64,000 bases of DNA from positions 62,001 through 126,000 of the IMG/VR virus record IMGVR_UViG_3300042305_001773; one strand, 5' to 3'. The notes beneath the pieces were generated by a model. That model worked only from the letters and a program-made list of their open reading frames with translations. It made no database searches and had not been told where the DNA came from. Shown here one piece after another: positions 32 through 61,718 of the stretch. Position numbers and translations under genes: made by a program. Position 1 is the first letter of the stretch, and every line of letters starts with the position of its first letter.

Positions 32-102
32 TGGGACCGCTGGGAATCGAACCCAGACCGAGGGATTAAAAGTCCCCTGCTCGACCTTCGAGCTACGGTC
101 CC
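32..102 (-). tRNA. trnK: tRNA-Lys(UUU)
   Basis: Reverse complement folds as a cloverleaf: GGGACCG/CGGTCCC acceptor stem, GCTC/GAGC D stem, GGGGA-CTTTTAA-TCCCT anticodon arm, CTGGG-TTCGATT-CCCAG T arm. No encoded CCA. Confidence 0.95.
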
Positions 103-9098: not shown

Positions 9099-9145
9099 AA
9101 AAAAAGACCCGCCGAGTGAGCATCGTTGAGAGGCCCGGCGGGTTT
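9099..9145 (-). terminator. Intrinsic terminator
   Basis: Minus strand ACCCGCCGGG-N17-CTCGGCGGGT, then C and a T7 run. Confidence 0.75.
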
Positions 9146-11872: not shown

Positions 11873-11878
11873 GTTTTA

Positions 11879-45681: not shown

Positions 45682-45717
45682 TGTCTGCAACTATAGCAGA
45701 CAAAACCATTCTGTCTA
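45682..45717 (-). promoter_or_regulatory. Extended -10 promoter overlapped by a palindrome
   Basis: Minus strand TAGACA-N16-TATAGT with TG extension; TGTCTGC-N7-GCAGACA inverted repeat spans the -10. Confidence 0.55.
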
Positions 45718-48700
45718 GCCCTTCTCGTCACAAAACCAATCGACTCCCAAACCCCTAGATTTCTCGGGTTTTAGGTTCTCTCCCCAGTGGAAAAACACGT
45801 CACGACTCATACCAAAGTGGTAAGGTTCGGCCACGTCGATTTTGGTGCCGTCGAGCCTGTGCGGCCAGAACGGAACACCGTCAATCATGCACGCCGGAAT
45901 AACTTCTTTGTACAAACGCTCAGCGTGCTCTAACGGCACAATTAACACAATTGCGTCGTGAATCTGCAGCGCGATTTTGTAATCAATATCCGAGTGCTCT
46001 GCGCGGTACTTGTAGAAGTTGTAAAGCGCGATAGACACAGCGTCAGCTACTCCACCTTGAATCGGGAAGTTCTGCGCCTGCCGCTCTTGCTCGCCACGTA
46101 CGGCTCGGTCCTTCGTCGGCATGAACCGGCGAAACCGCCCGTACGGTCCTACCAGCCACCCCGGGTCTTGCGACCGCATACGGCATTCTGCAAGAAACGT
46201 CTTAGTACCGGGATAAGATTGGAAGTAGGCGTCGATCATCGCTTGGCACTGATCGGCTGTAACGTCGTGGCCTTCCTCTTTGCATTGACGCGCAAGAGCT
46301 TCTGAACCGCGGCCGTACGGAATACCGAAATTCACGTTCTTGGCTGCGACACGAAGACCCTTTACGCCAGCGTCCACCATACCTTGTTTTGTAGGCGTGA
46401 CGCCGCTAAGCCGGAATGTCTTAACCGCCTGCTGGCTGTGGATGTCGTAGTGGTCCGGGTGATCCTCTGGCAGAAGATTACGCCGGACGTGCTCAATCAT
46501 ATTTTTATCTTGACTCAACCACGCGAGGACCGCCAATTCCGCACCAGTGAGGTCCGTTTCGATCCCGATGCAACCTTTGGGTACACGAAGGATTGAGCGG
46601 ACGGGATGCTGGTATTTATCTTTTCCGAGGATACGCTTGTAGTCGTCTTCCCGCCGCGAACTAAGGTTTTGTAGCGGCGGACGACTGCTGCTTGCCCGAC
46701 CTGTTTCCTTGGTCTGAAACATGTGAGTACGGACTTTACCATCAGAGTGGACGCACCCGACAAGACCTTTTTCATACGTGTAATTACCGTTCTCATCGAG
46801 TTCGTATTCTCCGTCTTCTGTTTCAGCGGGTTTGCGCAAGACCGACTGCAGCACCTGACTAATGAATTTATAGTCACGGATTTTCGCTGCCGTCGAGTTC
46901 ATGTGACCAAGAATGCCCAGACTCTCCTTGTCCGTACTGGGCGTGGCTGTCTCTGGGTTGATGCCTCGATACGACATTTCATTCCACAGCACAGGACGCT
47001 TACCGGTTGTCTTCACCGGGCGCAGGTCAAGCGTTTGCGCGTCTTCCGGGATTGGCGGTGAGTTCGTGTACCGGTCGGCAAAGTCGCGGCCGAAAAGCGC
47101 TATCGCCAATTGGGGCTGCGACTTTGGATTAAACGCCGGCCACTGCAGCTCCTCGCGGATTTCAGCCAGCAGTCGTTCCTGCGTGTTCATAAACAACGTG
47201 GTCAGCTCATCCGCGCGATTGCGGTCGATTTCAAGGCCAGTCATTTCCATCTCTAGAAACGCCAGCGATGAGTTGTGTGCTGTCCAGTACGGCAGCCAGC
47301 AGTCATGGCCTGTGCTGGACCGAGCGATGAGGCCGTCTTTGCCGTTGGTGCCGTAGAACCGCATCATGATTCGACGCGTGACGTCGACGTCATACGAGGC
47401 GTACGGGTGAAGAATATGCGCAGGGCACTCGCCGTAACCACCAACCTCGCTCGCCTTCAATTTGTTATCAGAGCGGTACTTTTTCTTCCAGTGATCAAGT
47501 GGCTCCCAGTAAGTTGGCGCCGCTGTGAATCTCATGGAGCACTCGTCGAGACCGTACCGCGCGCACTCGTTAACGGCGTGGTACATGAGACTTGTATCCC
47601 AACCGCCGTGCGTGCGGTCGTCGGGATCTTCGGCGGGAGCGTACTCCGGGCGTACATCCACGCCAAAATCAAAAAGCCATGGCAAGTCAGCACGGAAAAA
47701 GTGCCCACCCACACGGACGTTTCTTTCGGGCGTGCTTTTGAGCAGCCGCGTGAGCTGCCGGCGAGCTGCGTCCAGATTTGGCTGAAACGCTTCTGCGCCA
47801 CCCTGATGCCGCAGAACAATCGTGCGCGCCCACTTGTCTTTATTTGATATCTGAACCGTCCGCAGATACGCGCCTTCTTCCGTCGGATACTCGCCGTGCC
47901 ACTCACAGTCGATCGCGATGATGTTGGCGTTCGGGTCAGGATCGCTAACCATTTCGTCCACAATTTCCGCCAACGCTGCTTCGGTGTACACGTCGGCATG
48001 ATCAACGGCTTCCTCGTCTAAGATCTCATCGTGAATTAGGGCTTTAAATCGACGGATCTGTCCGACGAAATCTTCAGTCACTTCTGGCTTGCGCACCACA
48101 AATGCCGGGTGCATCACCGACAGCGCTTTCATCGTCCGGGGATTGCCGTCTGTGTCTACGGACGAGACGTCGAGGATGCGGCCGGCGAGGCCGGTGATGG
48201 CGCCCGTCGTACGCATGACTGCTTTTGTCGCCTCGTTGCCGAGGCACAGAATAAACTCCGGCTGGACGATGCGAATTTCTTGCTCCAGCAGAATTGCGCA
48301 GTTTTTGATCCACGCGGCCGGGACAGCCGTAATTTCCATCGGCGGCGCAAACTTGCACGCAAACGTAACGTACCAGTCCTCGTACGCTTCGGGACTGATG
48401 CCGCACTCCTCAAAGATATCAGCCATCATGTTCATGGCTGGACCGGCAGTCGCGTTCAAGCTCTCCATCTCGTAATAGCCGGGGAGCTTGCCGACGATCA
48501 TCACCTTGGCTTTGCGCCACGGCCCGTACATCTCTACCGCCGCGCCCCGTTTCCCCCAGCGATGCCCGGGAAGAAACGGTACGGGAATAAGGTCTTTAGA
48601 GGACTTGTGCGAAATCGGCAGATGGAAGTCTGGCCGATACAGCGCGTTGCGGTAGAGATTCGTCAGGTGCGTACCTACAGGCACGGCCTTCTTTTTCTTG

Positions 48701-48882
48701 GCGCTCGCCTCGTCAATCTCGTCGCCCAACGCTACGGCGTGCGCGATAAAGTCTGGGCCGGCCGGCGGCATACCCGGTTCCGTAAGCGGAATGAACGGGT
48801 ATGCCGCGGCCGTAAAATCTTCTGTGTTCGGGTCATACAGCGTCTGGGTTAGACGATGCGTGAGCGAAATACCCTGTGTCAT
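45715..48882 (-). CDS. polA: Family A DNA polymerase with N-terminal family-4 UDG-like domain and 3'-5' exonuclease
   Basis: IVGKLPG..HPAFVVR (UDG-like); IAIDCEW ExoI; TGRASS..PPLQNL; motif A ETDLTGAEL; motif B RVAAKNVNFGIPYG; motif C LQIHDAI. Confidence 0.93.
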   Translation of the reverse strand: MTQGISLTHRLTQTLYDPNTEDFTAAAYPFIPLTEPGMPPAGPDFIAHAVALGDEIDEASAKKKKAVPVGTHLTNLYRNALYRPDFHLPISHKSSKDLIPVPFLPGHRWGKRGAAVEMYGPWRKAKVMIVGKLPGYYEMESLNATAGPAMNMMADIFEECGISPEAYEDWYVTFACKFAPPMEITAVPAAWIKNCAILLEQEIRIVQPEFILCLGNEATKAVMRTTGAITGLAGRILDVSSVDTDGNPRTMKALSVMHPAFVVRKPEVTEDFVGQIRRFKALIHDEILDEEAVDHADVYTEAALAEIVDEMVSDPDPNANIIAIDCEWHGEYPTEEGAYLRTVQISNKDKWARTIVLRHQGGAEAFQPNLDAARRQLTRLLKSTPERNVRVGGHFFRADLPWLFDFGVDVRPEYAPAEDPDDRTHGGWDTSLMYHAVNECARYGLDECSMRFTAAPTYWEPLDHWKKKYRSDNKLKASEVGGYGECPAHILHPYASYDVDVTRRIMMRFYGTNGKDGLIARSSTGHDCWLPYWTAHNSSLAFLEMEMTGLEIDRNRADELTTLFMNTQERLLAEIREELQWPAFNPKSQPQLAIALFGRDFADRYTNSPPIPEDAQTLDLRPVKTTGKRPVLWNEMSYRGINPETATPSTDKESLGILGHMNSTAAKIRDYKFISQVLQSVLRKPAETEDGEYELDENGNYTYEKGLVGCVHSDGKVRTHMFQTKETGRASSSRPPLQNLSSRREDDYKRILGKDKYQHPVRSILRVPKGCIGIETDLTGAELAVLAWLSQDKNMIEHVRRNLLPEDHPDHYDIHSQQAVKTFRLSGVTPTKQGMVDAGVKGLRVAAKNVNFGIPYGRGSEALARQCKEEGHDVTADQCQAMIDAYFQSYPGTKTFLAECRMRSQDPGWLVGPYGRFRRFMPTKDRAVRGEQERQAQNFPIQGGVADAVSIALYNFYKYRAEHSDIDYKIALQIHDAIVLIVPLEHAERLYKEVIPACMIDGVPFWPHRLDGTKIDVAEPYHFGMSRDVFFHWGENLKPEKSRGLGVDWFCDEKG

Positions 48883-48888
48883 AACGCC

Positions 48889-49974
48889 TCATAACAAAAA
48901 CGAAAGATCAGCCGTCACGTCAACAGCGTCGGCGGCCGATGACAACATCTCAAACAACTCCGGCCGCGAGTAATCAGCCGGGTCACGATCGTCCGGGAGA
49001 ATAACCGGAACGACATTAACGTTTCTCTGGCAAAGAGCTGCGACAACATGCTCAAGCTCGGTCTGCGCGTCGTGATCGAGGATGACGAACACGGGCTTGT
49101 TCGCCCATGTCGTCGCGATCGTGTTGCACTGCCACGCAGATAACGTCTTACCAAAAATACAGACGCCTGCAACTCCAAGCCGCCACACGCTCGGTACGCC
49201 CTCGACCACTACGGCGGCTGGCTGTTCCGCCGCGTTATCGTAGTTGTAGAGCACCTGACTCTTGCGCATGCCGTTGTAGTACTTGACAGTGTTTCGGCCC
49301 TCTCCAACGACGCGGCCTTGCCAGCCAACTAACTGCCCATGAAAATGAACAGGAATATAAATACGCCCGTGCATAATCCGGTGTTTGTCCAGCCGCGGAT
49401 TTACACACACGCCGATTTTGAACACATCGGCGAGTTCGCGGATATTCGTAAACCCGCGAGAAGCCAAGTACTCGACAGCCGGGTGATACTCCGGCAGCGA
49501 ATCAATCGGCAGGATCTCTCCGGGCGGTTCAATCGTTTCGTGTACCGTGTCGAGCGGTACTGACCTGATTGGCGTACGCGTCATGAATCGCCGGCCGGCG
49601 CCGAACACCATATCTTCAAACTGCTCCAGCCGGCCGGGCTTATCAAGACAGTTTTCGTTGTAGCACACGACCAAATGCGTGTTTGCCCGACGACCATTGC
49701 GAATGTCTGATCCGTACCGATGATTCACCCACAGACGATTTCGCTGGTCACGACAAAACGGACAACACACGCAGTAATACTCACCCCAGCTGCCGCGATA
49801 AGTAGACTTGCCGCGGCGAAGGGGATCATCAAATTGTTCGACCTGCGCGGGCACACCTTCGTTTGCGATAGTTACATCGCCGAATTTGTGCGCGAGCAGG
49901 CCATACAGTACGGGATTCAGGGGATTTGAACTTGGCGTTTTTGAGACCGCCATTTTCATACTGACTCCTCTCAC
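48889..49974 (-). CDS. dnaG: DnaG-like primase
   Basis: CPFC zinc finger, YLASRGF, GWQGR, TOPRIM VVEG, LDHDA, DPAD. Confidence 0.88.
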   Translation of the reverse strand: MRGVSMKMAVSKTPSSNPLNPVLYGLLAHKFGDVTIANEGVPAQVEQFDDPLRRGKSTYRGSWGEYYCVCCPFCRDQRNRLWVNHRYGSDIRNGRRANTHLVVCYNENCLDKPGRLEQFEDMVFGAGRRFMTRTPIRSVPLDTVHETIEPPGEILPIDSLPEYHPAVEYLASRGFTNIRELADVFKIGVCVNPRLDKHRIMHGRIYIPVHFHGQLVGWQGRVVGEGRNTVKYYNGMRKSQVLYNYDNAAEQPAAVVVEGVPSVWRLGVAGVCIFGKTLSAWQCNTIATTWANKPVFVILDHDAQTELEHVVAALCQRNVNVVPVILPDDRDPADYSRPELFEMLSSAADAVDVTADLSFLL

Positions 49975-51680
49975 GACAGCATGTCTTCAGCAAATGTGTC
50001 CACCGGCATAATCCGGCGGGGTGTGGAACGCGGACGCGTGAGCGCCTGCGCTTCTTCCGGCGTAACGGGCGCAATGTCGCCGCGCTGAATGATCCGCTTT
50101 GCCGCTTCAGACGCAGTGTACTCGTCATTCACGAGCCGAATCTCTGCAACCCTATCATCAATCTTGATTAGACCCTTGAGATTATCCGCGCGAAGATACC
50201 GCAACTTAGACCAGTAAATCGTCGACACATGACACGACTCGTCTCGCGCGTTGACGCAAAGGCACGCGTGAAGGTTCTCAGCGAATGACTTTGAACCAGA
50301 CGCGTCGGCGTGCGAAACGTATCGATACGCCGGAATATTCTTGACCTCACCTTGTGCCAGCTGATGCGCCAGCATGATAACCGCACCTGTGGGCACAGCA
50401 ATCCGCGCGCGCAACTGGTCAACAGCGTTTTTAATCGGTCGCGCTAGCGACTCTGCGTACTTCGTCTTGGCGTTTGCGTTCATTTCACGCTCCACCATGA
50501 CGCCGCAATAGTCGATAGCGACAAAACCAATTTCCATTCCACGTTCACGCGCCAGTTGCTCAAGCGCGATAACAATCTCCGCCACACCGCCCGCGCCGCG
50601 GTTGCCTGTCTTTTCGTTTTGCGAAAAGTCCAGATACATGAAGTTATTATTGAACCACGAACTAGCGGCGACCCAGCGTTCACGCTCGCCGAACATTACT
50701 TCGCCGTTTCTGTTTACAGGCAACTCGCGATCGTAGTCTTTGAGATTTTCGGCTGTGGACAGTTCCGCCCAGAAGTCGCGGCCGACTGCAAATAACGAGC
50801 GATCGATCTGCGCGGCGGCAGACCAGAACGTCGGATTCATCTTTTCGGCAGGATCTTCGTAGCCGATAAACACGGACAGTTTATTGGGCGAGTTGGCGGC
50901 GTACTGCTGCGCCATACGGACAGCCGTAACTGCCAGAAGTGTCGTCTTACCGCCGCCATACGGCCCTAAGACGCCAATAATGTCGCCGGCCCGAAAGCCC
51001 TGCAAATACTCGTCAATAAACGGAAGCGTGGTCGGAACAGCAACCGGCGGGAGCGCGATAGGTTGCCCGATTTCGGGCATCATGGCCGCATTCTCGAAGC
51101 TCTTACCCAAAGCGTCGACCGACTGCGCTCTCCTTGTCCATTGCGCCAACTGCGCCTCTAGATTATCTGGCGCGCCGCCAAACGTATTTAATACCGCCTG
51201 CGCCTCACTTTTGATCATCCGCTCGCGAATAAACCGCCGAACAATATCTTCGATGTATGACTTTTCGGCGCGAGCTTCGACTTCAGGCAGCGGCGCGGCG
51301 TTAAAAGACTCATCGACAAATCGGACCAGCGCCTCAATCGCTTCGTTGCTTAAGGCAATAGCCGCCGTACCAGCAGCGGCGCTATCGCGCCACGCAAGCA
51401 GCCGGGTGGTGATCATATCAGCCGTCAGCGCGCCGAACTGCTCGTTCAATTCTTTCATCGACGCAAACAGGTAATAAAACGGCAGCTCGTCAGTCGAATG
51501 GCCGAAATGACTGGGCGACAGACCGACGCGCAACGAATCTCGCAGCAGCGCTGGATACCGTAAAAGACCCGAAATCATTGTGCCGATCTCGGGCGTTGTT
51601 ACCGCGTCAACTGCTCTTGGCTTTTCATCCATGAATTCACTCGGCATCGTAATTTCTCCAATGCTGCCGTATCTCGACAA
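49971..51680 (-). CDS. dnaB: DnaB-like replicative helicase
   Basis: GPYGGGKTT Walker A, VAIDYCG Walker B, LAHQL; start possibly MPSEF. Confidence 0.85.
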   Translation of the reverse strand: MSRYGSIGEITMPSEFMDEKPRAVDAVTTPEIGTMISGLLRYPALLRDSLRVGLSPSHFGHSTDELPFYYLFASMKELNEQFGALTADMITTRLLAWRDSAAAGTAAIALSNEAIEALVRFVDESFNAAPLPEVEARAEKSYIEDIVRRFIRERMIKSEAQAVLNTFGGAPDNLEAQLAQWTRRAQSVDALGKSFENAAMMPEIGQPIALPPVAVPTTLPFIDEYLQGFRAGDIIGVLGPYGGGKTTLLAVTAVRMAQQYAANSPNKLSVFIGYEDPAEKMNPTFWSAAAQIDRSLFAVGRDFWAELSTAENLKDYDRELPVNRNGEVMFGERERWVAASSWFNNNFMYLDFSQNEKTGNRGAGGVAEIVIALEQLARERGMEIGFVAIDYCGVMVEREMNANAKTKYAESLARPIKNAVDQLRARIAVPTGAVIMLAHQLAQGEVKNIPAYRYVSHADASGSKSFAENLHACLCVNARDESCHVSTIYWSKLRYLRADNLKGLIKIDDRVAEIRLVNDEYTASEAAKRIIQRGDIAPVTPEEAQALTRPRSTPRRIMPVDTFAEDMLS

Positions 51681-52407
51681 CGCCTAATTTAATCTCGTTC
51701 TCTATCCACCATTTGTATTCTGGATGCGCGGTCATGACAGCGGCATATGACCGTTGCTGCGCTTCGTAATCGAGCGCGGCTTTCCACAGATAGCGCTCTA
51801 CTGCTTTTTCACAGTTACGACGGGCCGCAAACGCGTTTCGAAAAAACGGTGTTGCGGTGACATAACTTTCGTCGCAGAGTACATATAGCTCCTGCGCGGC
51901 CTCTGGCATTTTGTATATCGCAGTTGTCGACATGCGTAAATGCAACGTCTCTGCCGCCACGTAAAAACGATCTTTGATTATCCGCGGCATGTGCGCCATG
52001 TAGTCGCGGTAAATCTCAGCCGATTTGGCGCTGTATAAAACAGACGGGCGCATTTCCGTCAGCCGCTGGTGGCCCGTTGAAATGCGTTCTGTGGCGAGCG
52101 CCGAGAAATGCGCATACACCCAGCCGCCAAGATCCGCGCCTGCGCGCTCTGCCGCGCGCAGAATTTTGCCCCAGACGGGCGTGTGCTTCACGCCAAAGTT
52201 ATCTTTACCACCATCCCACGCCGGCCTACGTTTCAGATGGGCAGGCGCTTCCCAGTCAGCGACGCGCTCGTTGAGATGAATATATTGGTACCGGATATAC
52301 GCAAGTTTTTGCGCGTCGGTGAGCGTGTGGTACCAGTCGACCGACAAGATATCTGAATCAATCTCCGCTGTCTGCGTCGCGGGTTCGCCAAGAGCGCTGC
52401 GCGTCAT
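51637..52407 (-). CDS. Hypothetical replication-cluster protein
   Basis: Start reassigned to MTRSALGEP; lies between the two helicase genes. Confidence 0.65.
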   Translation of the reverse strand: MTRSALGEPATQTAEIDSDILSVDWYHTLTDAQKLAYIRYQYIHLNERVADWEAPAHLKRRPAWDGGKDNFGVKHTPVWGKILRAAERAGADLGGWVYAHFSALATERISTGHQRLTEMRPSVLYSAKSAEIYRDYMAHMPRIIKDRFYVAAETLHLRMSTTAIYKMPEAAQELYVLCDESYVTATPFFRNAFAARRNCEKAVERYLWKAALDYEAQQRSYAAVMTAHPEYKWWIENEIKLGVVEIRQHWRNYDAE

Positions 52408-53896
52408 GCCAATTCTGCTCCCATCCGAGGAGTTTGTAGCTGTTTCGTCGACCCAGACTCTTCCGGTAGAAGGTCGGGTCGAACGTGTCCATGCAATCCA
52501 GTACTTCGCCAAATTCTTTCCGCGTGCCGTCTGGGGCTGTGTAAATTCGGCTTACACGCCCCGGACCCTGCACGTCCACAATATCGCTATCACGGTCATC
52601 GGCGCGGACAAGAACGTTTAGTTGTTCAAAGTCAACGCCGGTGGCCCATACATCCGTGGCGATTACGCGCTTGAGTTGTCCAGACTCGAAATTAGAGCGC
52701 ATGTCGTATTTCTGTATATCTGTGAGTGGTTTGTAATCGGCGGGCAGAAGACCCTTTTTCCGATAACCAGCACAGTCATACGGCGACATGTTTCCATATA
52801 CGAGACTGAAATCAGGCAATTGCGCGCCGAGATGAACAGCGTGTTCAATCGTCTCTACGAGGATCAAAATCTGATGCGATTCTGGGTATCCCCGCACGGC
52901 TTCGGCGATGATACGGTTCCGCTCGTGGTTTGTCCAGATGCCGTATCGCTTTCGTGCCACGCGGTTGCCGTAGCGCTCTGCAGGGTTTGACCGCAGCCGC
53001 ATGGGCAGCCAATTCACGCGCACCGGAACAACCAGCCCAAGCTCTACCGCGTTCTGATAAGTCAGCTCAAACACCATTGGACCGAACATAGGCTCAAGCA
53101 CAGCATGAGCGTTATCCATCCGTGCATATGGCGTCGCGCTCAAACCGAAATTGCGGCTCGTGCGGTACCGCGCTGCCAACGCTGTTGAAAAGTTCAGCGT
53201 GGCAAGTTGGTGAACTTCGTCCGCGAACAGAAAATCTGCGTCACCATCGGAGTGCGCCAAGCTGCCGGCCGTAATCACGGTCACGCGCTCCCACTGTTTC
53301 CAACCGTCGCCTACGCGACCTACCTTCGGCAAAAGCCGTTTCAGGCTGCGCACGATGCGGTCGGCCACGTCGACTGACTTGGTGACAACGTGGATCTTGG
53401 CGGTCGGAAACAACAGCGCTGCCGCGCCAATCAGGGTTGTTTTGCCGAACCCCGTGACGGCTTTGATAATCCCGCACGGTACGCGAGAAATCGTACGTAG
53501 GCACTCTTCCTGTCTGGCGCGGAACGTGATCCGGCCGTCGAGGTTTTCCCACTGCGGCGTGAAGCAGTCTGGGCGTTTTCTTTGACCAGATCTGTCAACG
53601 AGCAACGTGGGGCAGCCAAGTTTCTTAAGCCTGTTCACCATGCGGGCTAAATATCCGCTGAGCACAATCACATGTCCGTGCTCAACCCGGTGCAGCTTAT
53701 ATTCTTTCGTTTGAAAGAACATTCGCTGCCCGGTAATCGGATCTCGGCGCGCGCCACCGTGAACCTGCTCGACATGCGAATACCGCAAGTCGTGCGTGAG
53801 CCGTTTAATCAGCTCGTCGTTCAGCGGTGCGTTATCAGCGCCGGTGAGCGTTAAAACGTTTCCAACGCGTGTAATTGTTACAGGCTGAGCAATCAT
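52358..53896 (-). CDS. Superfamily 2 helicase (UvsW/ResIII-like)
   Basis: RARQEEC, AVTGFGKT, DEVH, GLSATP, ATDVWATGVDF, QGPGRVSR. Start reassigned to MIAQPV. Confidence 0.92.
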   Translation of the reverse strand: MIAQPVTITRVGNVLTLTGADNAPLNDELIKRLTHDLRYSHVEQVHGGARRDPITGQRMFFQTKEYKLHRVEHGHVIVLSGYLARMVNRLKKLGCPTLLVDRSGQRKRPDCFTPQWENLDGRITFRARQEECLRTISRVPCGIIKAVTGFGKTTLIGAAALLFPTAKIHVVTKSVDVADRIVRSLKRLLPKVGRVGDGWKQWERVTVITAGSLAHSDGDADFLFADEVHQLATLNFSTALAARYRTSRNFGLSATPYARMDNAHAVLEPMFGPMVFELTYQNAVELGLVVPVRVNWLPMRLRSNPAERYGNRVARKRYGIWTNHERNRIIAEAVRGYPESHQILILVETIEHAVHLGAQLPDFSLVYGNMSPYDCAGYRKKGLLPADYKPLTDIQKYDMRSNFESGQLKRVIATDVWATGVDFEQLNVLVRADDRDSDIVDVQGPGRVSRIYTAPDGTRKEFGEVLDCMDTFDPTFYRKSLGRRNSYKLLGWEQNWHDAQRSWRTRDADSGD

Positions 53897-53897
53897 A

Positions 53898-54395
53898 CTA
53901 GCCGTCGCTTCCCGGTCCTGAGACGGGCTCGACGGAAAGGACTTCAAATGTCCCATACTTTTCCTGCGCGTTGTTGAACGGGGAGAAGCCCCGGTACTTT
54001 CCAACTAAAGTGAGTAAATGCACAAAGTCTCCCAATGAAATCTCGTCTGGAAGCACCGCCGACAATATCACAATGTCGCCGGGGCGAAAAGCCTCGTGCA
54101 GCGCGTAGTGGCTACGCATCTGATTATCAGCTTGCGGCGTCAAAATCGTACGGCGCCAGTCGTTGCGCGGCTCGCCCATAACGATCGGGCACCAGTCGAT
54201 TTTTTTGACGTCACTGTGGTGCCGGTTGGCGATCTTGGCTGCGTAGCGCATGCAAGCCAGCCACGCAGACGGCAAGAACATAACCCGCTGACTTGGGTCG
54301 CGGTCAAAGCAGAAAATAATTTGGCCGTGACGCCGCTTTTTTGCCGAGCCAAGGCAAACACGGTTGAACCGGATTTTGATAGTTATTTCTTGCAT
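53898..54395 (-). CDS. Stand-alone Cas7-group RAMP-like protein (165 aa)
   Basis: ITIKIRFNRVCLGS (beta1+G); FDRDPSQRVMFLPSAWLACMR (RD..P.IPGSS.KG..R equivalent); HEAFRPGDIVILSAV; GKYRGFSPF..KYGTFEV (modified G-rich loop). Confidence 0.65.
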   Translation of the reverse strand: MQEITIKIRFNRVCLGSAKKRRHGQIIFCFDRDPSQRVMFLPSAWLACMRYAAKIANRHHSDVKKIDWCPIVMGEPRNDWRRTILTPQADNQMRSHYALHEAFRPGDIVILSAVLPDEISLGDFVHLLTLVGKYRGFSPFNNAQEKYGTFEVLSVEPVSGPGSDG

Positions 54396-54396
54396 G

Positions 54397-55338
54397 TCAC
54401 TGCTGCTTCGTGCTCATATGCTCCGCGTACGCTGCTCGCTCGGCCGGCGTTTTGAAAAACAAGTTGGGTGCGAACAAACCGTCTTTTGCGCCGCGCCGGT
54501 TTTCTAAACTGTCGAGCCAGTTGTAGCGTAAATAGCGCACAAATGCCTGCGACGCGCGTAGGTCGCCCTTAGCGCCGCCCCGCACAGCTTTGTGAATGCG
54601 ATACAGAAAGTTTGCTGGGTCCTGCAGATCGACATCCGCGGGCTCAACAGTCTTCCACGCCCGCAAAACGTTCGCGCAGCGCAGTTCACGGCTTTTGTGT
54701 AACAACCGTTTTGGCGTCGATACGTGCTCTTGTACTTGCGGCGTTAAACCTAAAAACAACTCAAGCTTTGCGGCGCGATCAGGAGCTTTTCTGTCGACGT
54801 ACCAGCGCGGGTCAACGATAGTCGCCAAAAGCTGTGCTGCGACCTCGCCGTCCAGCGTCGGTATGAACGCCAAAGCTTTGTGCGCAGGGTGCATACGAAA
54901 ATAGGCTTTCGCCGCATCATCAAACACAAAGTTAGCGCGCTGGAGTCGCCCGATCATGGCGTACGTCGGATAATCATGGACTGAGAGCTTGTGCCACCCG
55001 CCTGCAGCCGGGGCTACGTCTACGCTGCGCATTCGCCGCAGTACGATCTGTGGGTCGGCAATCTCTTCTGCCGTGTGCAGCACGTTTGGCCCCGCCACCT
55101 CGACACGATTGATCTCGTTTTTGTAGTGCCGCAGATACAACGCAGAAATAAGCTCTGCATTCTGCGGTAGCCCCAGCACGCGCACCTGTAAGCCTATGCC
55201 GGTCAGCACCGGAGACAGTAAAAACGAATCAAGCAATTGATCTGAATTTGTCGCCGGACCAATGCCGACAGAAAACCAGATCCGCCCATCTGTGTGGGTG
55301 TGCAGTTTGATTACGTTTTCGTCAACTACGCTGTACAT
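54397..55338 (-). CDS. IS110/Nop(Tas)-like protein, apparently inactivated
   Basis: AFIPTLDGEVAAQLLATIVDPRWY..AKLELFLGLTP matches the IS110 Tnp/Nop IPGIG..AA.LLAEI.D..RF...L..Y.GL.P motif; C-terminal RASQAFVRYLRYNW helix; no DEDD or SG catalytic motifs seen. Confidence 0.6.
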   Translation of the reverse strand: MYSVVDENVIKLHTHTDGRIWFSVGIGPATNSDQLLDSFLLSPVLTGIGLQVRVLGLPQNAELISALYLRHYKNEINRVEVAGPNVLHTAEEIADPQIVLRRMRSVDVAPAAGGWHKLSVHDYPTYAMIGRLQRANFVFDDAAKAYFRMHPAHKALAFIPTLDGEVAAQLLATIVDPRWYVDRKAPDRAAKLELFLGLTPQVQEHVSTPKRLLHKSRELRCANVLRAWKTVEPADVDLQDPANFLYRIHKAVRGGAKGDLRASQAFVRYLRYNWLDSLENRRGAKDGLFAPNLFFKTPAERAAYAEHMSTKQQ

Positions 55339-57475
55339 GCCGTAACTCCGGTGCCTCTAATTCAATTGCTGATTCAAACAGATGCGAAAGATTAATCGCG
55401 TGCGTGACGAGCAAACACTGCAAACCTTTTGCTGTGGATAGCTCGCGTAGCTTCTCTAGAACCGGCGCTAATGCCTGAATACGCGGCTGATCCAAAGACG
55501 CAGTCGGCTCGTCCAGCGCGAGTAAGCCGATTTCTTCGGCAAACATGGCGTTGACGGCGACTCGAAACGCAAGTGCCAAGACGGTTTTTTGCCCGACGGA
55601 CAATCGCTGGGCGACTTGTCGGCGGCCGTCAAAGAATTCGGCGATAAATGTCGGTGTTCCATCCGTGGCCACCTTGATAACAAAATTAACACGAAACACT
55701 TGCAGCAGCTCGTTAATCGCTGACTCTAGCCGCTGGAGGTTGCGCTGGGCGACTAGGCGCGGAGCGTTCTTCAGGGCCTCTCGTGCTGTTTCGGCAACAC
55801 CCGACCAACTGCGCAATTTCTTAGCCCGCTGTTCTTGCTGTCTAACCTCCGCTGCCTGCTCGTCAAAACGCTTCTTCTCAAACAAAATTTGCGCGCGCTG
55901 ATCAGCCAGTCCGGTTCGCGTCTTCAACTGATCCTGCAACTGGTGCAGACGTGTCTGCGATAAATGGGCGTCGGCCTGTGTTACCGAGATCTCTGCTAAC
56001 TCTTCCTCTAGCTGCTTTTTGCGCGACCGTAACGCTTCGATGGCCCCGTTGACCTGTGCGCGTTCTTCACGCGCTTTCTGCGCCAACGGTTCAATCTCTT
56101 TTTTGACGCGCTGAAATTCTTCGTAATCAACTACCGCCTGTTGCAGCGCGTCCTCGCTCAACTCCGGCGGCTTCACGGCCAGCAGGTCTTTTTCCGCCGC
56201 ATTAAGCTGCTGTTCTTTTGCTTCCCGGGCTTTCTGTCTCTTTTCCCAGTCCTGCCACACACCTTCTTTAAATGTCTGCTGGCTCGCGGCCTGTTTCCAC
56301 TCCGCTAACTCTTCTTCCATTTTAACAAGGTCGGCTTTGTACTGTTCAACCTGTGAGGCAAGCTGCGACGACGGCGTATGGCACGTCGGGCACTCGGCAA
56401 TGCCGTCTGCCGAAAACATATCAATAAAACGCTTGGCCTCTTTGATGCGCTGCTCTTTTGCGTGCTGATCGCGGCGCATCTCTTCTGCTGTCGGTAGGCC
56501 GGGTTTTTCTGGCTGCTGGTCTTTCTCTCGCTCAGCGTCGAGTTGTGCCCGCGTAGCTTGAAAGTTTTCTTTCGCCTTTGCCACGCTCTTGTAGCTTGCC
56601 CAGTGACCCAGCGCGACTCTCGCGGCAGCGTGAGACTCTTCCTGCCCGTTAGCCGCCTCTGTCAGCGCAAGTAAGTCGGCGTCGTACTGCGCAGACGCGT
56701 TAACAAGGTCATCCAGCTTTTTTTGCTGCAGCTCCAGCTGCTGTTCGAGCTTCGACAGCTCGCCCGCACCGCGCTCCCGCGCGTCCCACTGCTGAATCGT
56801 CGCTTGATCAGACCGCATGTGCGACAGGATGTCGTCGGGGTTGGGCAACTTCGCCATCTGCTCCGACAACGCCTGCGCCCGCTTGGCCGCGTCGCTGGCC
56901 TGCGCGTCTAACTCGTCAGCCGTCTGCACGATCTCGGGAATGTTTAGCTTTGTCAAAGACTTGCCGATCGCGTCCTGACACTTGTCAGCACGAGCGGTGT
57001 TAAACAACCGCTGAAAAAACTTATCTGTGTCGGTCTGATTATCGTCGATGAACGAGAAGATCTCGGTCTGCGACACAATAATGAACCGGCTGATGAATTT
57101 AGCGTCGACGCCCAGCAGCTTTTCGATGCCGGCGGTCACGCTCTTGTCGCCGCGGCCTATTTCTTTGCCGTCCACGAGCAGCGTGGCCTGCTCTTTCTCC
57201 GGGAGCAGGTGCCGCGTCACAACGGCGATATGCCCGTTGTGCTCGAACTCTAGCGTGGCGTACGCCGGTTCACCTTCGCGAGCATATTGCGAAATGTTGT
57301 CGGACTTTACGCCAAAATTTGGATTCTCGCCGGTGAGCAACCACCGAATCGCCCCGAACAAGCTGCTCTTGCCCGAACCGTTTTCGCCGAGAATCGCCAC
57401 CAGCCCGCGCGTGAACTCACACACTCGATAGCGGTGGTGTACCCAGTTCTTCACTTCCAGTCTCAAGAGCTGCAT
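55322..57475 (-). CDS. sbcC: SbcC/Rad50 ATPase
   Basis: GENGSGKSS, coiled coil with CPTC hook, LSVGQK signature, LDEPT, LLVTH. Confidence 0.94.
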   Translation of the reverse strand: MQLLRLEVKNWVHHRYRVCEFTRGLVAILGENGSGKSSLFGAIRWLLTGENPNFGVKSDNISQYAREGEPAYATLEFEHNGHIAVVTRHLLPEKEQATLLVDGKEIGRGDKSVTAGIEKLLGVDAKFISRFIIVSQTEIFSFIDDNQTDTDKFFQRLFNTARADKCQDAIGKSLTKLNIPEIVQTADELDAQASDAAKRAQALSEQMAKLPNPDDILSHMRSDQATIQQWDARERGAGELSKLEQQLELQQKKLDDLVNASAQYDADLLALTEAANGQEESHAAARVALGHWASYKSVAKAKENFQATRAQLDAEREKDQQPEKPGLPTAEEMRRDQHAKEQRIKEAKRFIDMFSADGIAECPTCHTPSSQLASQVEQYKADLVKMEEELAEWKQAASQQTFKEGVWQDWEKRQKAREAKEQQLNAAEKDLLAVKPPELSEDALQQAVVDYEEFQRVKKEIEPLAQKAREERAQVNGAIEALRSRKKQLEEELAEISVTQADAHLSQTRLHQLQDQLKTRTGLADQRAQILFEKKRFDEQAAEVRQQEQRAKKLRSWSGVAETAREALKNAPRLVAQRNLQRLESAINELLQVFRVNFVIKVATDGTPTFIAEFFDGRRQVAQRLSVGQKTVLALAFRVAVNAMFAEEIGLLALDEPTASLDQPRIQALAPVLEKLRELSTAKGLQCLLVTHAINLSHLFESAIELEAPELRHVQRS

Positions 57476-58598
57476 CGTTGGGTTCTCCCGTCATGTATTT
57501 TGAAAACTGTACATCAAGCTCTTTGTTTGCGTCGTCGGCTGCGAGTAGTGCCGCGGCCAACTTGTATGCGTCTGTCCCGTCACCCAGCAAGTCGCCGAGC
57601 GCGGACAGCAAATCGTTCTTGGCGCCGTCTCTGGTGCCCGTGCGTTTATCGGCGTCGTACTTGTTGGTCAACGCCTCACAGAACACATGCGCTGCGTCGC
57701 CAACTGCCGTGACCAGCCGGATATAAGCGTCAGGCAGCCGCTTGTCGAACTTCATGCGCACAATTGGCTTCATAATCTCTGGCGGATACCCAGCCTGAGT
57801 CGCCTCGGAGCGCGCGTCATTGATATCTCTGATCAACCATTCGGCGCACAGGTTATCTAGCAGCGCCTGATCTTCAACGCGATAGTCGAGGAACCGGCGT
57901 GTCTTGAGCGGCACAGGACGGAACTCAAAGTTCCCTTTCTCGTCGCCATAGATAACAAAAAAGAACTTCGCCGCCTCTTCACCGCAGTCCTGCATACAGA
58001 TTGAGCCCGGCGATAGCATCTGAATGGGCTGGCCCTGCGCGTTTGTGGCTGTCACTGTTTTGGTTACGTGAAAGTCGCCGGCCAGTACGGTTCGCACATG
58101 GTGCACGTCAAACAGGTCGCACTCAGTGCGGCCGACGTTGCCCATGAAATCTTTCCAAACCTGATGCACGATCAAGATATCAGTATCTTCCGGCACTTCT
58201 TTGAACGCCGTCTGGATCTCGCCGCGCGGCAGCCAGTCGAGGCCGTAAACGCGCACGCCGTTGATCGGCACAGTCTGCTTATGAATATGCCGCGACCATT
58301 TGTGCACGCTCAGCCACGGCGCGTTGCGGTCGTACTCGTGGTTGCCCTGAATATAGTGCACGTCAAGGTTAGCAGCCTGCATCCGGCTCAAACCGTTACA
58401 CAGCTGCGCGATCGGGCGGGCTGAGTTGCTTTTCTTCTCAAGCACGTCGCCGCCCAGAATTAACTGCAGGCCGTGGTTAATGCAGTAGTCAATAATTTGA
58501 TTGAAGCTGTAATACGCGTCGCCGTAGATGCCGGGACGCGTTGACCACGCACCGTCTTCAAGGTGCAGGTCGGCGGTAAACACAAAAAGGGGTCTCAC
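57417..58598 (-). CDS. sbcD: SbcD/Mre11 nuclease
   Basis: ADLHL, GGDV, GNHE, GDFH metallophosphoesterase motifs; adjacent to sbcC. Confidence 0.92.
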   Translation of the reverse strand: MRPLFVFTADLHLEDGAWSTRPGIYGDAYYSFNQIIDYCINHGLQLILGGDVLEKKSNSARPIAQLCNGLSRMQAANLDVHYIQGNHEYDRNAPWLSVHKWSRHIHKQTVPINGVRVYGLDWLPRGEIQTAFKEVPEDTDILIVHQVWKDFMGNVGRTECDLFDVHHVRTVLAGDFHVTKTVTATNAQGQPIQMLSPGSICMQDCGEEAAKFFFVIYGDEKGNFEFRPVPLKTRRFLDYRVEDQALLDNLCAEWLIRDINDARSEATQAGYPPEIMKPIVRMKFDKRLPDAYIRLVTAVGDAAHVFCEALTNKYDADKRTGTRDGAKNDLLSALGDLLGDGTDAYKLAAALLAADDANKELDVQFSKYMTGEPNDAALETGSEELGTPPLSSV

Positions 58599-59865: not shown

Positions 59866-61440
59866 TTAAACGTCGCCGCCAACAACGCCGCCAAACTGCG
59901 TAATAATAGCGTGTGCGTCATCAACCGAAATATCAAAAAACTCGTTGTCTTGCCGTTTATCGGCATACTCTCTGTGTAAACGTGTTTCGAGCGCTACGCA
60001 GTCGCCCGTAACGATATACCCAACTAGTTTTAATCCACCCGGCACAAAAGTCTGACTTTCGCGTTGTCGCGCTTCTACAGCGCGCCGTGTGCGCCCAATT
60101 TTAATGTAACCGCGCGTCGGCTCCTGCAAAAAGTAGACGTGCTCGTCCGTTTTTACGGGCGCTGATTCGTTCAGCGTCTCCTCGCCTAAAAACCCGGTCG
60201 GCACACGCGACAGATGTTTCGGTACAACAACGGCGCCCGCGCGCAGAATAAGCTTTGGCTCTTTTCTGCCGACGCCGGTCCAGTACAGCGCCATGTGCGG
60301 ATTTCTCCAATGCGGCGAGACAAGGCTTTGCGCGTTTAACTTCTTGCCAATAGAAAATCCGCGCCCCTGAATGTTTGCCGCTTTATCCTCCAGCCACTTC
60401 TTTGCCGCCTCGTCAGTTTCACGGTCGTAACGTTCCTGATGCTTTGCCAGCACAATCGGCGTGATCAGGTCGCTACCGCAGTGCAACATCGAGGCGAACG
60501 ACGCGAGTTTGAAAACAAACTGATTGACCTCTAGTGATTGGTACCCCATGTACAGCGGCAGCCGCTGCCCGCGGCAATCGTCTGCTGCGTGCTGATGTTT
60601 AATCGTCTCTTCAATTGTTTTCAAACGAACGACTGAGTTCTGTGACACAGGAAACATGTTCGGACCGCGCGTAAACTGATACGAATCGCCCACAGCAAGC
60701 TGCAAATCATCGGGCGCCTGCATCGCCTGATATCTAGTGGCTTCTAGCTGAAACGCCACAATGCTTTCGTGATCGTTGCCGGCAGCAAAGCTCGGTTCGT
60801 ATGGGCGGTCGTTTGATTCAGGAATGTCTTCGTACACACCGCCGAGCAAATAAACCTCGTGGTGATGATGCTCGCCCGGAAGCGGCTTGGTGTACTCGAC
60901 AAGCGCGCTGCCAATTACGCCAGCAAAAACGTCGACGTTTTTGTTAGTAAAATATTGCGTGTTCTCCGGCACAACGTGCGGCTGCCCCACCGTAATCAGA
61001 ACAGATTTGATTCCATACGGTTCGTGCCCCTCGGCAAATCGGAACAGCATTGTGCGCTGCGGGAAGTTCAAAAACGCCGCAGACACGTCGAGCTTTGTAT
61101 TACGAATCAGCTGCTCGACAATCGGGTAAACGTTATAGAACGGACGCTCCGTGTTGTACCACTCGTACTCGGATAGAACGCTGATGTGCGTCCGAACAAT
61201 ATCGCCAACAACTTTGTCTGTCCACTCGCCGGGAACGACGTTGCGGTCAAAAGGTTGCGTCGCCATCTGCTGTAAAAATTCTACATTCGACTGCTTCTTA
61301 AGCGCCTGCAACGCGCGGTCAACCGCGTTTAAATAAGCGTCACGCGATAAGCCAATTATTTCAGACTCGCCAGCTGCTAGTTGATGTTCAAAGTCAGTTA
61401 TTGATCGTTGTTTTGCATTTACAAAATCGTGAAAACGCAT
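59866..61440 (-). CDS. Protein with C-terminal GIY-YIG-like (T5orf172/MUG113) domain
   Basis: HVYFLQEPTRGYIKIGRT..R..E..LETRLHREY..RQDNEFF, preceded by a PHWRNPH-motif domain. Confidence 0.8.
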   Translation of the reverse strand: MRFHDFVNAKQRSITDFEHQLAAGESEIIGLSRDAYLNAVDRALQALKKQSNVEFLQQMATQPFDRNVVPGEWTDKVVGDIVRTHISVLSEYEWYNTERPFYNVYPIVEQLIRNTKLDVSAAFLNFPQRTMLFRFAEGHEPYGIKSVLITVGQPHVVPENTQYFTNKNVDVFAGVIGSALVEYTKPLPGEHHHHEVYLLGGVYEDIPESNDRPYEPSFAAGNDHESIVAFQLEATRYQAMQAPDDLQLAVGDSYQFTRGPNMFPVSQNSVVRLKTIEETIKHQHAADDCRGQRLPLYMGYQSLEVNQFVFKLASFASMLHCGSDLITPIVLAKHQERYDRETDEAAKKWLEDKAANIQGRGFSIGKKLNAQSLVSPHWRNPHMALYWTGVGRKEPKLILRAGAVVVPKHLSRVPTGFLGEETLNESAPVKTDEHVYFLQEPTRGYIKIGRTRRAVEARQRESQTFVPGGLKLVGYIVTGDCVALETRLHREYADKRQDNEFFDISVDDAHAIITQFGGVVGGDV

Positions 61441-61476
61441 ACGTGCGTCCTTTGTGTTTGACTTACCAAACTACAG

Positions 61477-61547
61477 ATGCCCGACTAGGATTCGAACCTA
61501 GACAAAGGGAACCAAAATCCCTTGTGCTACCGTTACACCATCGGGCA
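61477..61547 (-). tRNA. trnQ: tRNA-Gln(UUG)
   Basis: TGCCCGA/TCGGGCA acceptor, AGGGA-TTTTGGT-TCCCT anticodon arm, CTAGG-TTCGAAT-CCTAG T arm. Confidence 0.93.
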
Positions 61548-61554
61548 ACCGCGC

Positions 61555-61717
61555 GTTGATTCCATTCATTTACGCTCTTCTGACGCCCACCTCGGATACC
61601 GTCATGTTAAGCGTCGTCAGCTCGTGGTTATAACCCACTCACGGTTTGGGTGCCGGGCCGTCGATGATTGCAACGGCTTTGTGGCGGAAACGGGACGCCG
61701 GCTCGCCCTCCCGTGTA
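61555..61717 (-). ncRNA. Candidate structured RNA upstream of tRNA-Gln
   Basis: No ORF; several stems (ACGGGA/TCCCGT, GCCGTTG/CGACGGC, ACCCA/TGGGT, CTGACG/CGTCAG). Confidence 0.3.
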
Positions 61718-61718
61718 T

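What the first reader, a model, noticed from the sequence alone, without database searches (positions are those of the whole stretch)
53898..54395. Minimal stand-alone Cas7-like RAMP with no cas operon or array
The 165-aa protein carries the ordered RAMP elements (beta1-G, RD...P-S-x-x-x-x-x-R, HE..PG-beta, C-terminal G..G...YG.F.V loop) with almost no insertions (seen; pattern from the Csm3/Csf2 group). No cas1/2/5/6/8/10 or CRISPR repeats are in the window. It could be an ancestral-type or non-CRISPR RAMP forming an RNA filament, or an anti-CRISPR decoy subunit that poisons host Cascade (inference). It should be compared with recently reported viral stand-alone RAMP-RNA systems.
Basis: partly seen in the sequence, partly recalled or inferred. 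Interest (0 to 1): 0.8.

Follow-up and report, generated by a model that had tools for sequence, protein, structure and literature searches.

The report
Phage RAMP protein lacking guide RNAs
A small, strongly conserved protein of a 205-kb lake phage has the fold of CRISPR backbone (RAMP) proteins and is a distant relative of the recently described viral Vipr guide-RNA proteins. It belongs to a separate branch that is fixed inside the phage's DNA replication genes and has no guide-RNA array nearby, so what it binds is an open and testable question.

Summary
The 165-aa ORF at 53898-54395(-) is real and has over 200 homologues. Its AlphaFold model (pLDDT 83) matches only CRISPR RAMP backbone subunits (Csm3, Cmr4, Cas7) in the PDB. 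Profile comparison links it to array-flanked viral Vipr proteins, including the validated SUSP1 Vipr (97% probability, E 2e-11, 150 columns).

It is not a typical VIPR locus:
- It belongs to a deep separate clade (100/100 support).
- At 26-100% identity that clade always lies in one arrangement: SbcD, SbcC, p313, RAMP, SF2 helicase, then (where the contig reaches) DnaB, primase, PolA.
- It is among the best-conserved genes there.
- Four of the five SUSP1 residues compared that read GGY are replaced (R138 to H, D177 to P).
- No period-5 repeat array of any motif occurs in the window, in about 101 kb of this genome, or near 41 of 42 relatives.
- One relative (L017) carries a canonical six-unit YNNGG array in a variable island after tRNA-Gln.

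Best reading: a Vipr-derived RAMP recruited to phage DNA metabolism. The rival is a VIPR effector guided by distant arrays. An anti-CRISPR decoy is unsupported. It is a new variant of a known kind.

The parts
53898..54395 (-). 165-aa single-RRM RAMP protein, Vipr superfamily, replication-module clade
   Evidence: ORF. Homologues. AF2 model and Foldseek hits to Csm3/Cmr4/Cas7. hhalign to array-flanked Viprs and SUSP1 Vipr: 97%, E 1.7e-11. Separate clade with 100/100 support.
54397..55338 (-). p313, invariant upstream partner; its stop lies 1 nt before the RAMP start. Confident model with no PDB structural match, function unknown
   Evidence: Synteny in 42 of 42 loci and in distant members (300-333 aa). 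AF2 pLDDT 88.4. No PDB fold match. Faint Transposase_20/IS110 lead only.
52358..53896 (-). SF2 (ResIII/DEAD-type) helicase, 512 aa; its start lies 1 nt after the RAMP stop. Invariant downstream partner and candidate functional partner
   Evidence: Pfam ResIII/Helicase_C and PHROG DNA helicase. Called as 512 aa. Synteny. Only generic helicase-motif similarity to PbeA and type IV DinG.
55322..57475 (-). SbcC/Rad50-like ATPase, same operon-like block
   Evidence: Pfam SMC_N, AAA_23. Syntenic in relatives and in distant members L195 and L201.
57417..58598 (-). SbcD/Mre11-like phosphoesterase
   Evidence: Pfam Metallophos. Synteny.
49971..51647 (-). DnaB-like helicase. Primase (48889-49974) and UDG-PolA (45715-48882) follow in the same block
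   Evidence: Pfam. Gene calls. Synteny.
61476..61547 (-). tRNA-Gln marking the border of a hypervariable island. In relative L017 a six-unit YNNGG vrRNA-type array starts 4 nt after this tRNA; in the window a T5orf172 gene follows instead
   Evidence: ARAGORN and Rfam. L017 sequence. Homology to relatives stops exactly at the tRNA 3' end.

Best explanation
The gene encodes a minimal RAMP protein (one RRM core, a beta-hairpin 'thumb' and a glycine-rich loop) that shares ancestry with the viral Vipr proteins of VIPR systems. It belongs to a deep, separate clade that has become a fixed part of a phage DNA replication/recombination module. It is probably co-translated with a 313-aa protein of unknown fold upstream and an SF2 helicase downstream, next to SbcCD, DnaB, primase and PolA. 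I think it most likely still binds a single nucleic-acid strand (RNA or ssDNA) through helix 1, the thumb and the G-loop, possibly as an oligomer as RAMPs do. I think it serves the phage's own DNA metabolism together with p313 and the helicase, for example by recognising or stabilising R-loops, primers or recombination intermediates. On this reading it is not a programmable silencer guided by a GGY/NN repeat RNA. Shown: the fold, the homology, the clade separation, the synteny, the conservation, the replaced GGY-reading residues and the absence of arrays. Inferred: strand binding, partnership with p313 and the helicase, and the role in replication or recombination.
For: Fold: all top PDB hits are RAMP backbone subunits. 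The Atlas structural neighbours of a close relative are PF03787 RAMPs, Csb2 and Cas5d. BFVD hits include a viral 'RAMP superfamily protein'.

Homology to Vipr: hhalign 97.0% (E 9e-11) to 19 array-flanked viral ORFs; 97.3% (E 1.7e-11, 150 columns) with SUSP1 Vipr as master sequence; borderline direct PDB hit to 36pp 'SUSP1 Vipr'.

Separate clade: one branch with 100/100 support and length about 4.9 separates 38 clade members from 19 array-flanked Viprs.

Context: the order p206, SbcD, SbcC, p313, RAMP, helicase, p291, DnaB, primase, PolA holds in 42 of 42 loci. The RAMP is 63-100% identical, against minima of 37-50% for p291, DnaB, SbcC and p313. The p300/RAMP/helicase core, with SbcCD where the contig reaches, recurs at 26-34% identity in unrelated samples. 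Start and stop codons are 1 nt apart on both sides.

Changed RNA-reading residues: SUSP1 H17, R138, D177 and R179 map to S17, H100, P139 and N141; only W178 to F140 keeps its character. R138A and D177A abolish SUSP1 silencing (10.64898/2026.04.26.720927, section 5). Every array-flanked Vipr has G-[ILV]-[GC]-[DRE]-[FWY]-R-P, whereas every clade member has G-[FI]-S-P-[FYA].

No guide array: no YNNGG or NNNGG tract, no period 4-8 signal and no XYZNN signal in the window (positive controls 26-30 of 30, window 21, shuffles 20-21). None in contig positions 42,220-133,440 or the sibling extension. None within 10 kb in 41 of 42 relatives or in five distant members.
Against: One relative, L017 (RAMP 82% identical, same G-loop), carries a canonical six-unit YNNGG array on the same strand 7.5 kb upstream. 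The clade RAMP may therefore use such RNAs after all. About half of the 205-kb genome (positions 1-42,219 and 133,441-205,044) was not scanned. Residue mapping at about 15% identity is uncertain, and some array-flanked Viprs also lack the Asp (L089 and L079 have G-R-F-R-P). No experimental or RNA-seq evidence exists for any ligand. Placement among replication genes does not prove a replication function: the VIPR paper says some VIPR types have helicase or nuclease accessory genes (10.64898/2026.04.26.720920, section 9).
Confidence: 0.5

Rival explanations
1. It is a working VIPR effector. It polymerises on vrRNAs transcribed from arrays that lie far from the vipr gene in variable cargo islands, as in L017, or are supplied by other elements. 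It silences or, with the helicase and SbcCD, attacks competing phage DNA.
For: The L017 array has the full vrRNA layout: 10-13 YNNGG units per guide, a period of about 92 nt, and the 3' end GGCRTGG plus a U-rich stretch, as in canonical VIPR loci L054, L064 and L067. It lies on the same strand as the RAMP gene and next to an HNH-like ORF. Homology to Vipr is solid. The aromatic G-loop residue that stacks on G2 is kept. The VIPR paper reports helicase or nuclease vap genes in types III-V, and orphan vrRNAs are known to be used in trans (10.64898/2026.04.26.720920; 10.64898/2026.10.15.759431).
Against: Arrays are absent near 41 of 42 relatives, from about 101 kb of this genome and from distant clade members. 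L017-type array signatures occur in no other IMG/VR contig, although 11 lineage genomes of about 194-205 kb are in that collection. The GGY-reading residues are replaced. The gene behaves as a conserved core gene. No target was found for any L017 guide: searches found none, and the single 21-of-22 match lies in a tail gene of gut-bacterial phages and is judged chance.
Confidence: 0.27
2. The L017 array is a 'solo' array that redirects another phage's canonical Vipr, and the clade RAMP has no link to it. The RAMP is an RNA-processing or RNA-binding factor (Cas6- or Csm3-like chemistry using the invariant D33, H96, H100 and E101) acting on phage transcripts or primers.
For: Solo vrRNAs on Vipr-less phages and satellites are documented (10.64898/2026.10.15.759431). 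The array sits in a hypervariable island and is unique to one contig. The clade has invariant acidic and histidine residues at positions where canonical Viprs have R-P.
Against: No catalytic site was tested. The Foldseek matches are to backbone subunits, not Cas6. No substrate is known.
Confidence: 0.15
3. It is an anti-CRISPR decoy subunit that poisons the host's Cascade or Csm complex.
For: It has the RAMP fold and is phage-encoded. Nothing else supports this.
Against: It shows strict synteny with replication genes, 63-100% conservation across the lineage and persistence at 26% identity. There are no anti-CRISPR-associated regulators beside it. It has no close similarity to any host Cas7 family model.
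Confidence: 0.03

Closest known systems
Vipr proteins of VIPR systems (e.g. Escherichia phage SUSP1 Vipr, PDB 36pp; bioRxiv 10.64898/2026.04.26.720920 and 10.64898/2026.04.26.720927)
   Same: Viral, small single-RRM RAMP with thumb and G-loop, outside any CRISPR locus. Profile homology over the whole length (97%, E 1.7e-11). Shared alpha2/G-loop/beta4 pattern: AG-x3-G-x3-aromatic...[FY]-G-x-F-x-V.
   Different: Separate deep clade. G-loop S-P-F in place of G-D-[FW]-R-P, and H-E in place of the R-P thumb motif. No flanking intergenic arrays. Tightly packed inside the SbcCD/helicase/DnaB/primase/PolA module rather than a two-gene vipr-vap locus. Conserved as a core gene.
Csm3 / Cmr4 / type VII Cas7 backbone subunits of class 1 CRISPR effectors
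   Same: Best structural matches (9g9g_D, 6s6b_I, 8yhe_E, 9j9e; E 4e-5 to 1e-3, TM about 0.5).
   Different: 9-15% identity. Not recognised by Pfam RAMPs, NCBIfam or PADLOC models. Shorter (165 aa against about 200-300). No other cas genes and no CRISPR array.
RAMP-plus-helicase pairs: Cascade with Cas3, and type IV Csf2 with DinG
   Same: A RAMP gene directly followed by an SF2 helicase gene, here with SbcCD nuclease genes upstream. This is an analogy of arrangement only.
   Different: No Cas5, Cas8 or Cas6, and no crRNA. The helicase shares only generic motifs with DinG (E 4e-4) and has no HD nuclease domain.
VIPR-null phages and satellites with solo vrRNAs (bioRxiv 10.64898/2026.10.15.759431)
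   Same: The protein and RNA halves of the system are uncoupled within a genome.
   Different: This is the mirror image: here the protein is present without arrays, while L017 shows an array far from the gene.

Membership tests
Vipr / VIPR system | Single-RRM RAMP fold with thumb and glycine-rich loop | tested here: met
   AF2 model pLDDT 82.8 with a beta-alpha-beta-beta-alpha-beta core, hairpin 81-99 and loop 135-149. Foldseek PDB and BFVD hits are RAMPs. Atlas structural neighbours agree.
Vipr / VIPR system | Sequence or profile homology to validated or array-flanked Vipr proteins | tested here: met
   hhalign 97.0% E 9e-11 and 97.3% E 1.7e-11 over 150 columns with SUSP1 as master. Against SUSP1 alone: 74.5%. 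PDB 36pp hit at E 0.047.
Vipr / VIPR system | Residues that read the GGY motif (SUSP1 H17, R138, D177, W178, R179) | tested here: not met
   They map to S17, H100, P139, F140 and N141; only the aromatic is kept. The G-loop signature differs from all 19 array-flanked Viprs examined. The alignment is at about 15% identity, so the mapping is approximate.
Vipr / VIPR system | vrRNA: tandem YNNGG (or other XYZNN) repeats in or beside the locus | tested here: not met
   None in the window, in about 101 kb of the genome, near 41 of 42 relatives, or near distant clade members. The controls SUSP1, L054 and L017 were detected. One relative has an array 7.5 kb away. Half of the genome is unscanned.
Vipr / VIPR system | Accessory vap gene beside vipr | tested here: inconclusive
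   p313 and an SF2 helicase are invariant neighbours.
Vipr / VIPR system | Encoded by a virus or provirus | tested here: met
   205-kb tailed-phage contig with virion, fibre and replication genes. Relatives are IMG/VR viral contigs.
Vipr / VIPR system | Forms an RNA-guided filament that binds DNA by the 1-nt-skip code | not testable with these tools
   Needs biochemistry. No RNA data hold this genome.
CRISPR-Cas class 1 backbone (Cas7/Csm3/Csf2) | Recognised by Cas7/Csm3/Csf2/RAMP sequence models | tested here: not met
   No hit in Pfam, NCBIfam or PADLOC for the protein or for 103 family members.
CRISPR-Cas class 1 backbone (Cas7/Csm3/Csf2) | Co-located cas genes and a CRISPR array | tested here: not met
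   No CRISPR-like repeats, no Rfam CRISPR repeat match, and no cas hits among neighbours.
Anti-CRISPR proteins | Accessory, patchily distributed gene in a variable locus (as I know the class) | tested here: not met
   Core gene with invariant synteny and high conservation.

The most novel reading that the evidence does not exclude
A Vipr-type RAMP was domesticated, long ago, as a core factor of the replication/recombination machinery of a widespread group of large phages. It works with a dedicated SF2 helicase, a protein whose model matches no solved fold (p313) and SbcCD. That would be a Cascade-Cas3-like partnership acting on the phage's own DNA, using either no guide array or a kind of guide not yet recognised. 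It would show that RAMPs have a life outside immunity and inter-virus conflict, and would bear on which came first.
Probability: 0.35. Interest if true: 0.8.

Novelty: new variant of a known kind. Interest (0 to 1): 0.6.

Why it matters
VIPR systems were described only in 2026 and are proposed to be older than CRISPR. In the papers read here, vipr genes are typically flanked by intergenic vrRNA regions, or vrRNAs occur solo. This clade is different: it is very widespread (156 clusters at 50% identity), lacks arrays, has changed base-reading residues, and is fixed between SbcCD and a helicase in the replisome block. If it binds a different ligand, it widens what RAMPs are known to do. It would also offer a natural experiment on how the GGY pocket evolved. 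If instead it uses distant arrays, it shows that VIPR effectors can be core genes armed by swappable cargo arrays, with a helicase and nuclease at hand. Either outcome can be tested with a 165-aa protein.

Tried and rejected
1. Direct family searches (Pfam, PHROGs, NCBIfam, PADLOC) and GenBank phage searches by DNA and protein found nothing for the RAMP.

2. Searches for a vrRNA in the window were all at chance level: strict YNNGG, tolerant NNNGG, single-base period-5, periods 4-8, motif-agnostic XYZNN, and the L017 tail signature with 3 mismatches.

3. IMG/VR-wide searches with three L017 array signatures recovered only L017's own contig.

4. Targets of the L017 guides under the 1-nt-skip rule:
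- Nothing above shuffled-guide controls in local sequence.
- Seeds for guides 3 and 5 in IMG/VR gave one family with 21 of 22 canonical positions in a tail-protein gene.
- I rejected it for four reasons. Its relatives are in gut Bacillota and Bacteroidota genomes. No other guide converges on it. The skipped bases are not on wobble positions. The corrected chance is about 0.1.

5. p313: the model is confident but has no PDB match, and the Transposase_20 signal is faint. I make no functional call.

6. RNA evidence: the 'RNA' runs hold only 6-10% of the words, as fragments 85-90% alike and probably DNA. They show nothing about transcription.

7. I first suspected the 2981-aa protein might be an N4-type virion RNA polymerase. 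PHROGs shows it is a repetitive virion/baseplate protein.

Full report
THE OBSERVATION

The ORF at 53898..54395 (minus strand, ATG, 165 aa) is present as described. It is called identically on the source contig. It is a real, conserved gene:
- 229 homologues in the 90%-identity clusters, many on contigs of about 200 kb.
- 156 representatives at the 50% level, nearly all 150-220 aa.

No family library recognises the protein or any of 103 relatives. GenBank phages hold nothing similar.

FOLD

An AlphaFold2 model built on 31 homologues is confident (pLDDT 82.8, pTM 0.76). It shows a ferredoxin-like core, a beta-hairpin at 81-99 and a glycine-rich loop between helix 121-134 and the last strand. 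In Foldseek against the PDB:
- 58 matches at E <= 1e-3.
- All 50 top matches are class 1 CRISPR effector structures: Csm (type III-A), Cmr (III-B), type VII, type III-E and type I-B CAST Cascade.
- Best E is 4e-5 and TM about 0.5.

The ESM Atlas structural neighbours of a near relative are PF03787 RAMPs, Csb2 and Cas5d. BFVD gives viral RAMP-like proteins.

RELATION TO VIPR

A deep-profile search of PDB sequences gave a borderline hit to 36pp, 'SUSP1 Vipr protein'. That led to three 2026 preprints:
- VIPR systems pair a viral RAMP (Vipr) with vrRNAs of 9-16 YNNGG repeats plus a tail. They recognise DNA through the NN dinucleotides with a 1-nt skip and act in conflicts between phages (10.64898/2026.04.26.720920).
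- Vipr forms a helical filament with one protomer per repeat. H17, R138, D177, W178 and R179 hold the GGY motif (10.64898/2026.04.26.720927).
- Solo vrRNAs occur on satellites and on Vipr-less phages (10.64898/2026.10.15.759431).

I scanned viral contigs for seven-unit YNNGG tracts. I then searched my profile against all ORFs of those loci. It picked out 23 ORFs, mostly about 160-260 codons, nearly all lying directly beside arrays. Profile-profile comparison gave:
- 97.0%, E 9e-11, against those ORFs.
- 97.3%, E 1.7e-11, over 150 columns, with SUSP1 Vipr (fetched) as master sequence.

The protein is therefore a homologue of Vipr.

WHY IT IS NOT AN ORDINARY VIPR LOCUS

1. Phylogeny. One branch (100/100 support, length about 4.9) separates 38 members of this family from 19 array-flanked Viprs including SUSP1. 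The two groups were gathered by different routes, so the split is partly expected, but the branch is long.

2. Context.
- In all 42 related IMG/VR loci the order is p206, SbcD, SbcC, p313, RAMP, SF2 helicase, p291, DnaB-like helicase, primase, UDG-PolA.
- The RAMP is 63-100% identical. That is better conserved than SbcC, p313, p291, DnaB and primase.
- Four members at 26-34% identity from unrelated samples keep the p300/RAMP/helicase core, with SbcCD where the contig allows.
- The RAMP start lies 1 nt after the p313 stop, and the helicase start lies 1 nt after the RAMP stop.

3. RNA-reading residues.
- SUSP1 H17, R138, D177 and R179 map to S17, H100, P139 and N141. Only W178 to F140 keeps its character.
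- R138A and D177A abolish SUSP1 function.
- All array-flanked Viprs share G-[ILV]-[GC]-[DRE]-[FWY]-R-P. All clade members, L017's included, have G-[FI]-S-P-[FYA].

4. No array.
- The window has no YNNGG or NNNGG tract, no period-5 signal for any base and no period 4-8 signal.
- A motif-agnostic XYZNN scan was prompted by the report of GAC/NN, CAC/NN and similar arrays (10.64898/2026.10.21.760802). It scored 21 of 30, against 20-21 in shuffles and 26-30 in the controls L017, SUSP1 and L054.
- Walking along the source contig (JGI 3300042305 Ga0453197_0000013, 205,044 bp; the window is about 62,001-126,000) covered positions 42,220-133,440, plus about 10 kb more on a near-identical sibling contig. 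No array was found. The gene-free gaps to the left hold five tRNAs and a tmRNA.

THE EXCEPTION: L017

L017 (IMGVR_UViG_3300022752_005685; RAMP 82% identical) carries a typical array at 2321-2830:
- Six units about 92 nt apart.
- Each unit has 10-13 YNNGG repeats and ends in GGCRTGG plus a U-rich stretch.
- It lies on the RAMP strand, begins 4 nt after tRNA-Gln, and is followed by an HNH-like ORF.

Homology with every relative stops exactly at the tRNA 3' end and resumes near p206. The array therefore sits in a variable cargo island. In the window that island holds a T5orf172 gene.

Three array signatures recover only this contig in IMG/VR, which also holds 11 lineage genomes of about 194-205 kb.

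I decoded the guides by the published rule and found no target:
- Nothing in local sequence.
- One 21-of-22 match in IMG/VR, in a tail gene whose relatives are in gut bacteria. I regard it as chance.

Whether the array serves the clade RAMP or is a solo array aimed at another phage's Vipr cannot be decided here.

NEIGHBOURS

- p313 gives a confident model (pLDDT 88.4) with no PDB match and only a faint Transposase_20/IS110 signal.
- The helicase is a ResIII/DEAD SF2 enzyme with only generic similarity to defence helicases.
- The window has no CRISPR array and no cas genes among the proteins tested.
- Public runs show the genome in lake and freshwater metagenomes. The RNA-labelled runs hold only diverged fragments, probably DNA.

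VERDICT

The decoy idea has no support.

The best-supported reading (0.5) is a Vipr-derived RAMP recruited to phage DNA metabolism, working with p313 and the helicase, with a changed ligand pocket and no guide array.

The main rival (0.27) is a true VIPR effector armed by distant, swappable arrays.

I class it as a new variant of a known kind. I could not check whether the VIPR authors already typed this clade, because their supplementary tables are not held.

Noticed in passing
window 9107-9142 (-): Rfam abiF RNA motif (44.6 bits, above the gathering score) in a 247-nt gap between small ORFs.
   Followed up: no
L203:10592-13227 (just left of the window on the same contig); window 32-102: The phage encodes a cluster of tRNAs (Lys, Leu, Val, Glu, Leu) and a tmRNA with tag peptide GTFNSVPALAA.
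   Followed up: partly
window 59866-61547; L017:2245-5010: A hypervariable island lies between tRNA-Gln and p206. The window holds a T5orf172/MUG113-domain gene and tRNA-Met there. L017 holds a six-unit vrRNA-type array, an HNH-like 120-aa ORF and other small genes.
   Followed up: yes
window 61548-61718 (-); L017:2080-2244: A non-coding stretch of about 170 nt upstream of tRNA-Gln looks similar by eye in both genomes. It could be a leader or a structured RNA.
   Followed up: no
L005, L007, L026, L027, L032 (about 10496-11900); L028, L032, L034 (upstream of the RAMP); L199:1129-3666: Insertions of about 1-1.7 kb lie between the RAMP and the helicase, or between p313 and the RAMP, in some relatives. 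One distant member has a LAGLIDADG domain inside its helicase. These are probably mobile endonucleases or inteins.
   Followed up: no
window 45715-48882 (-): A family A DNA polymerase is fused to an N-terminal uracil-DNA-glycosylase-superfamily domain and a 3'-5' exonuclease domain.
   Followed up: no
window 54397-55338 (-): p313 folds confidently (pLDDT 88) into an N-terminal alpha/beta domain plus a helical domain, with no PDB match. The similarity to IS110 Transposase_20 is very faint.
   Followed up: partly
window 11879-20824 (-) and 6062-8602 (-): A 2981-aa highly repetitive virion/baseplate-type protein and a collagen-like (Gly-X-Y) fibre protein. The latter accounts for the only short-range repeat family in the window.
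   Followed up: partly
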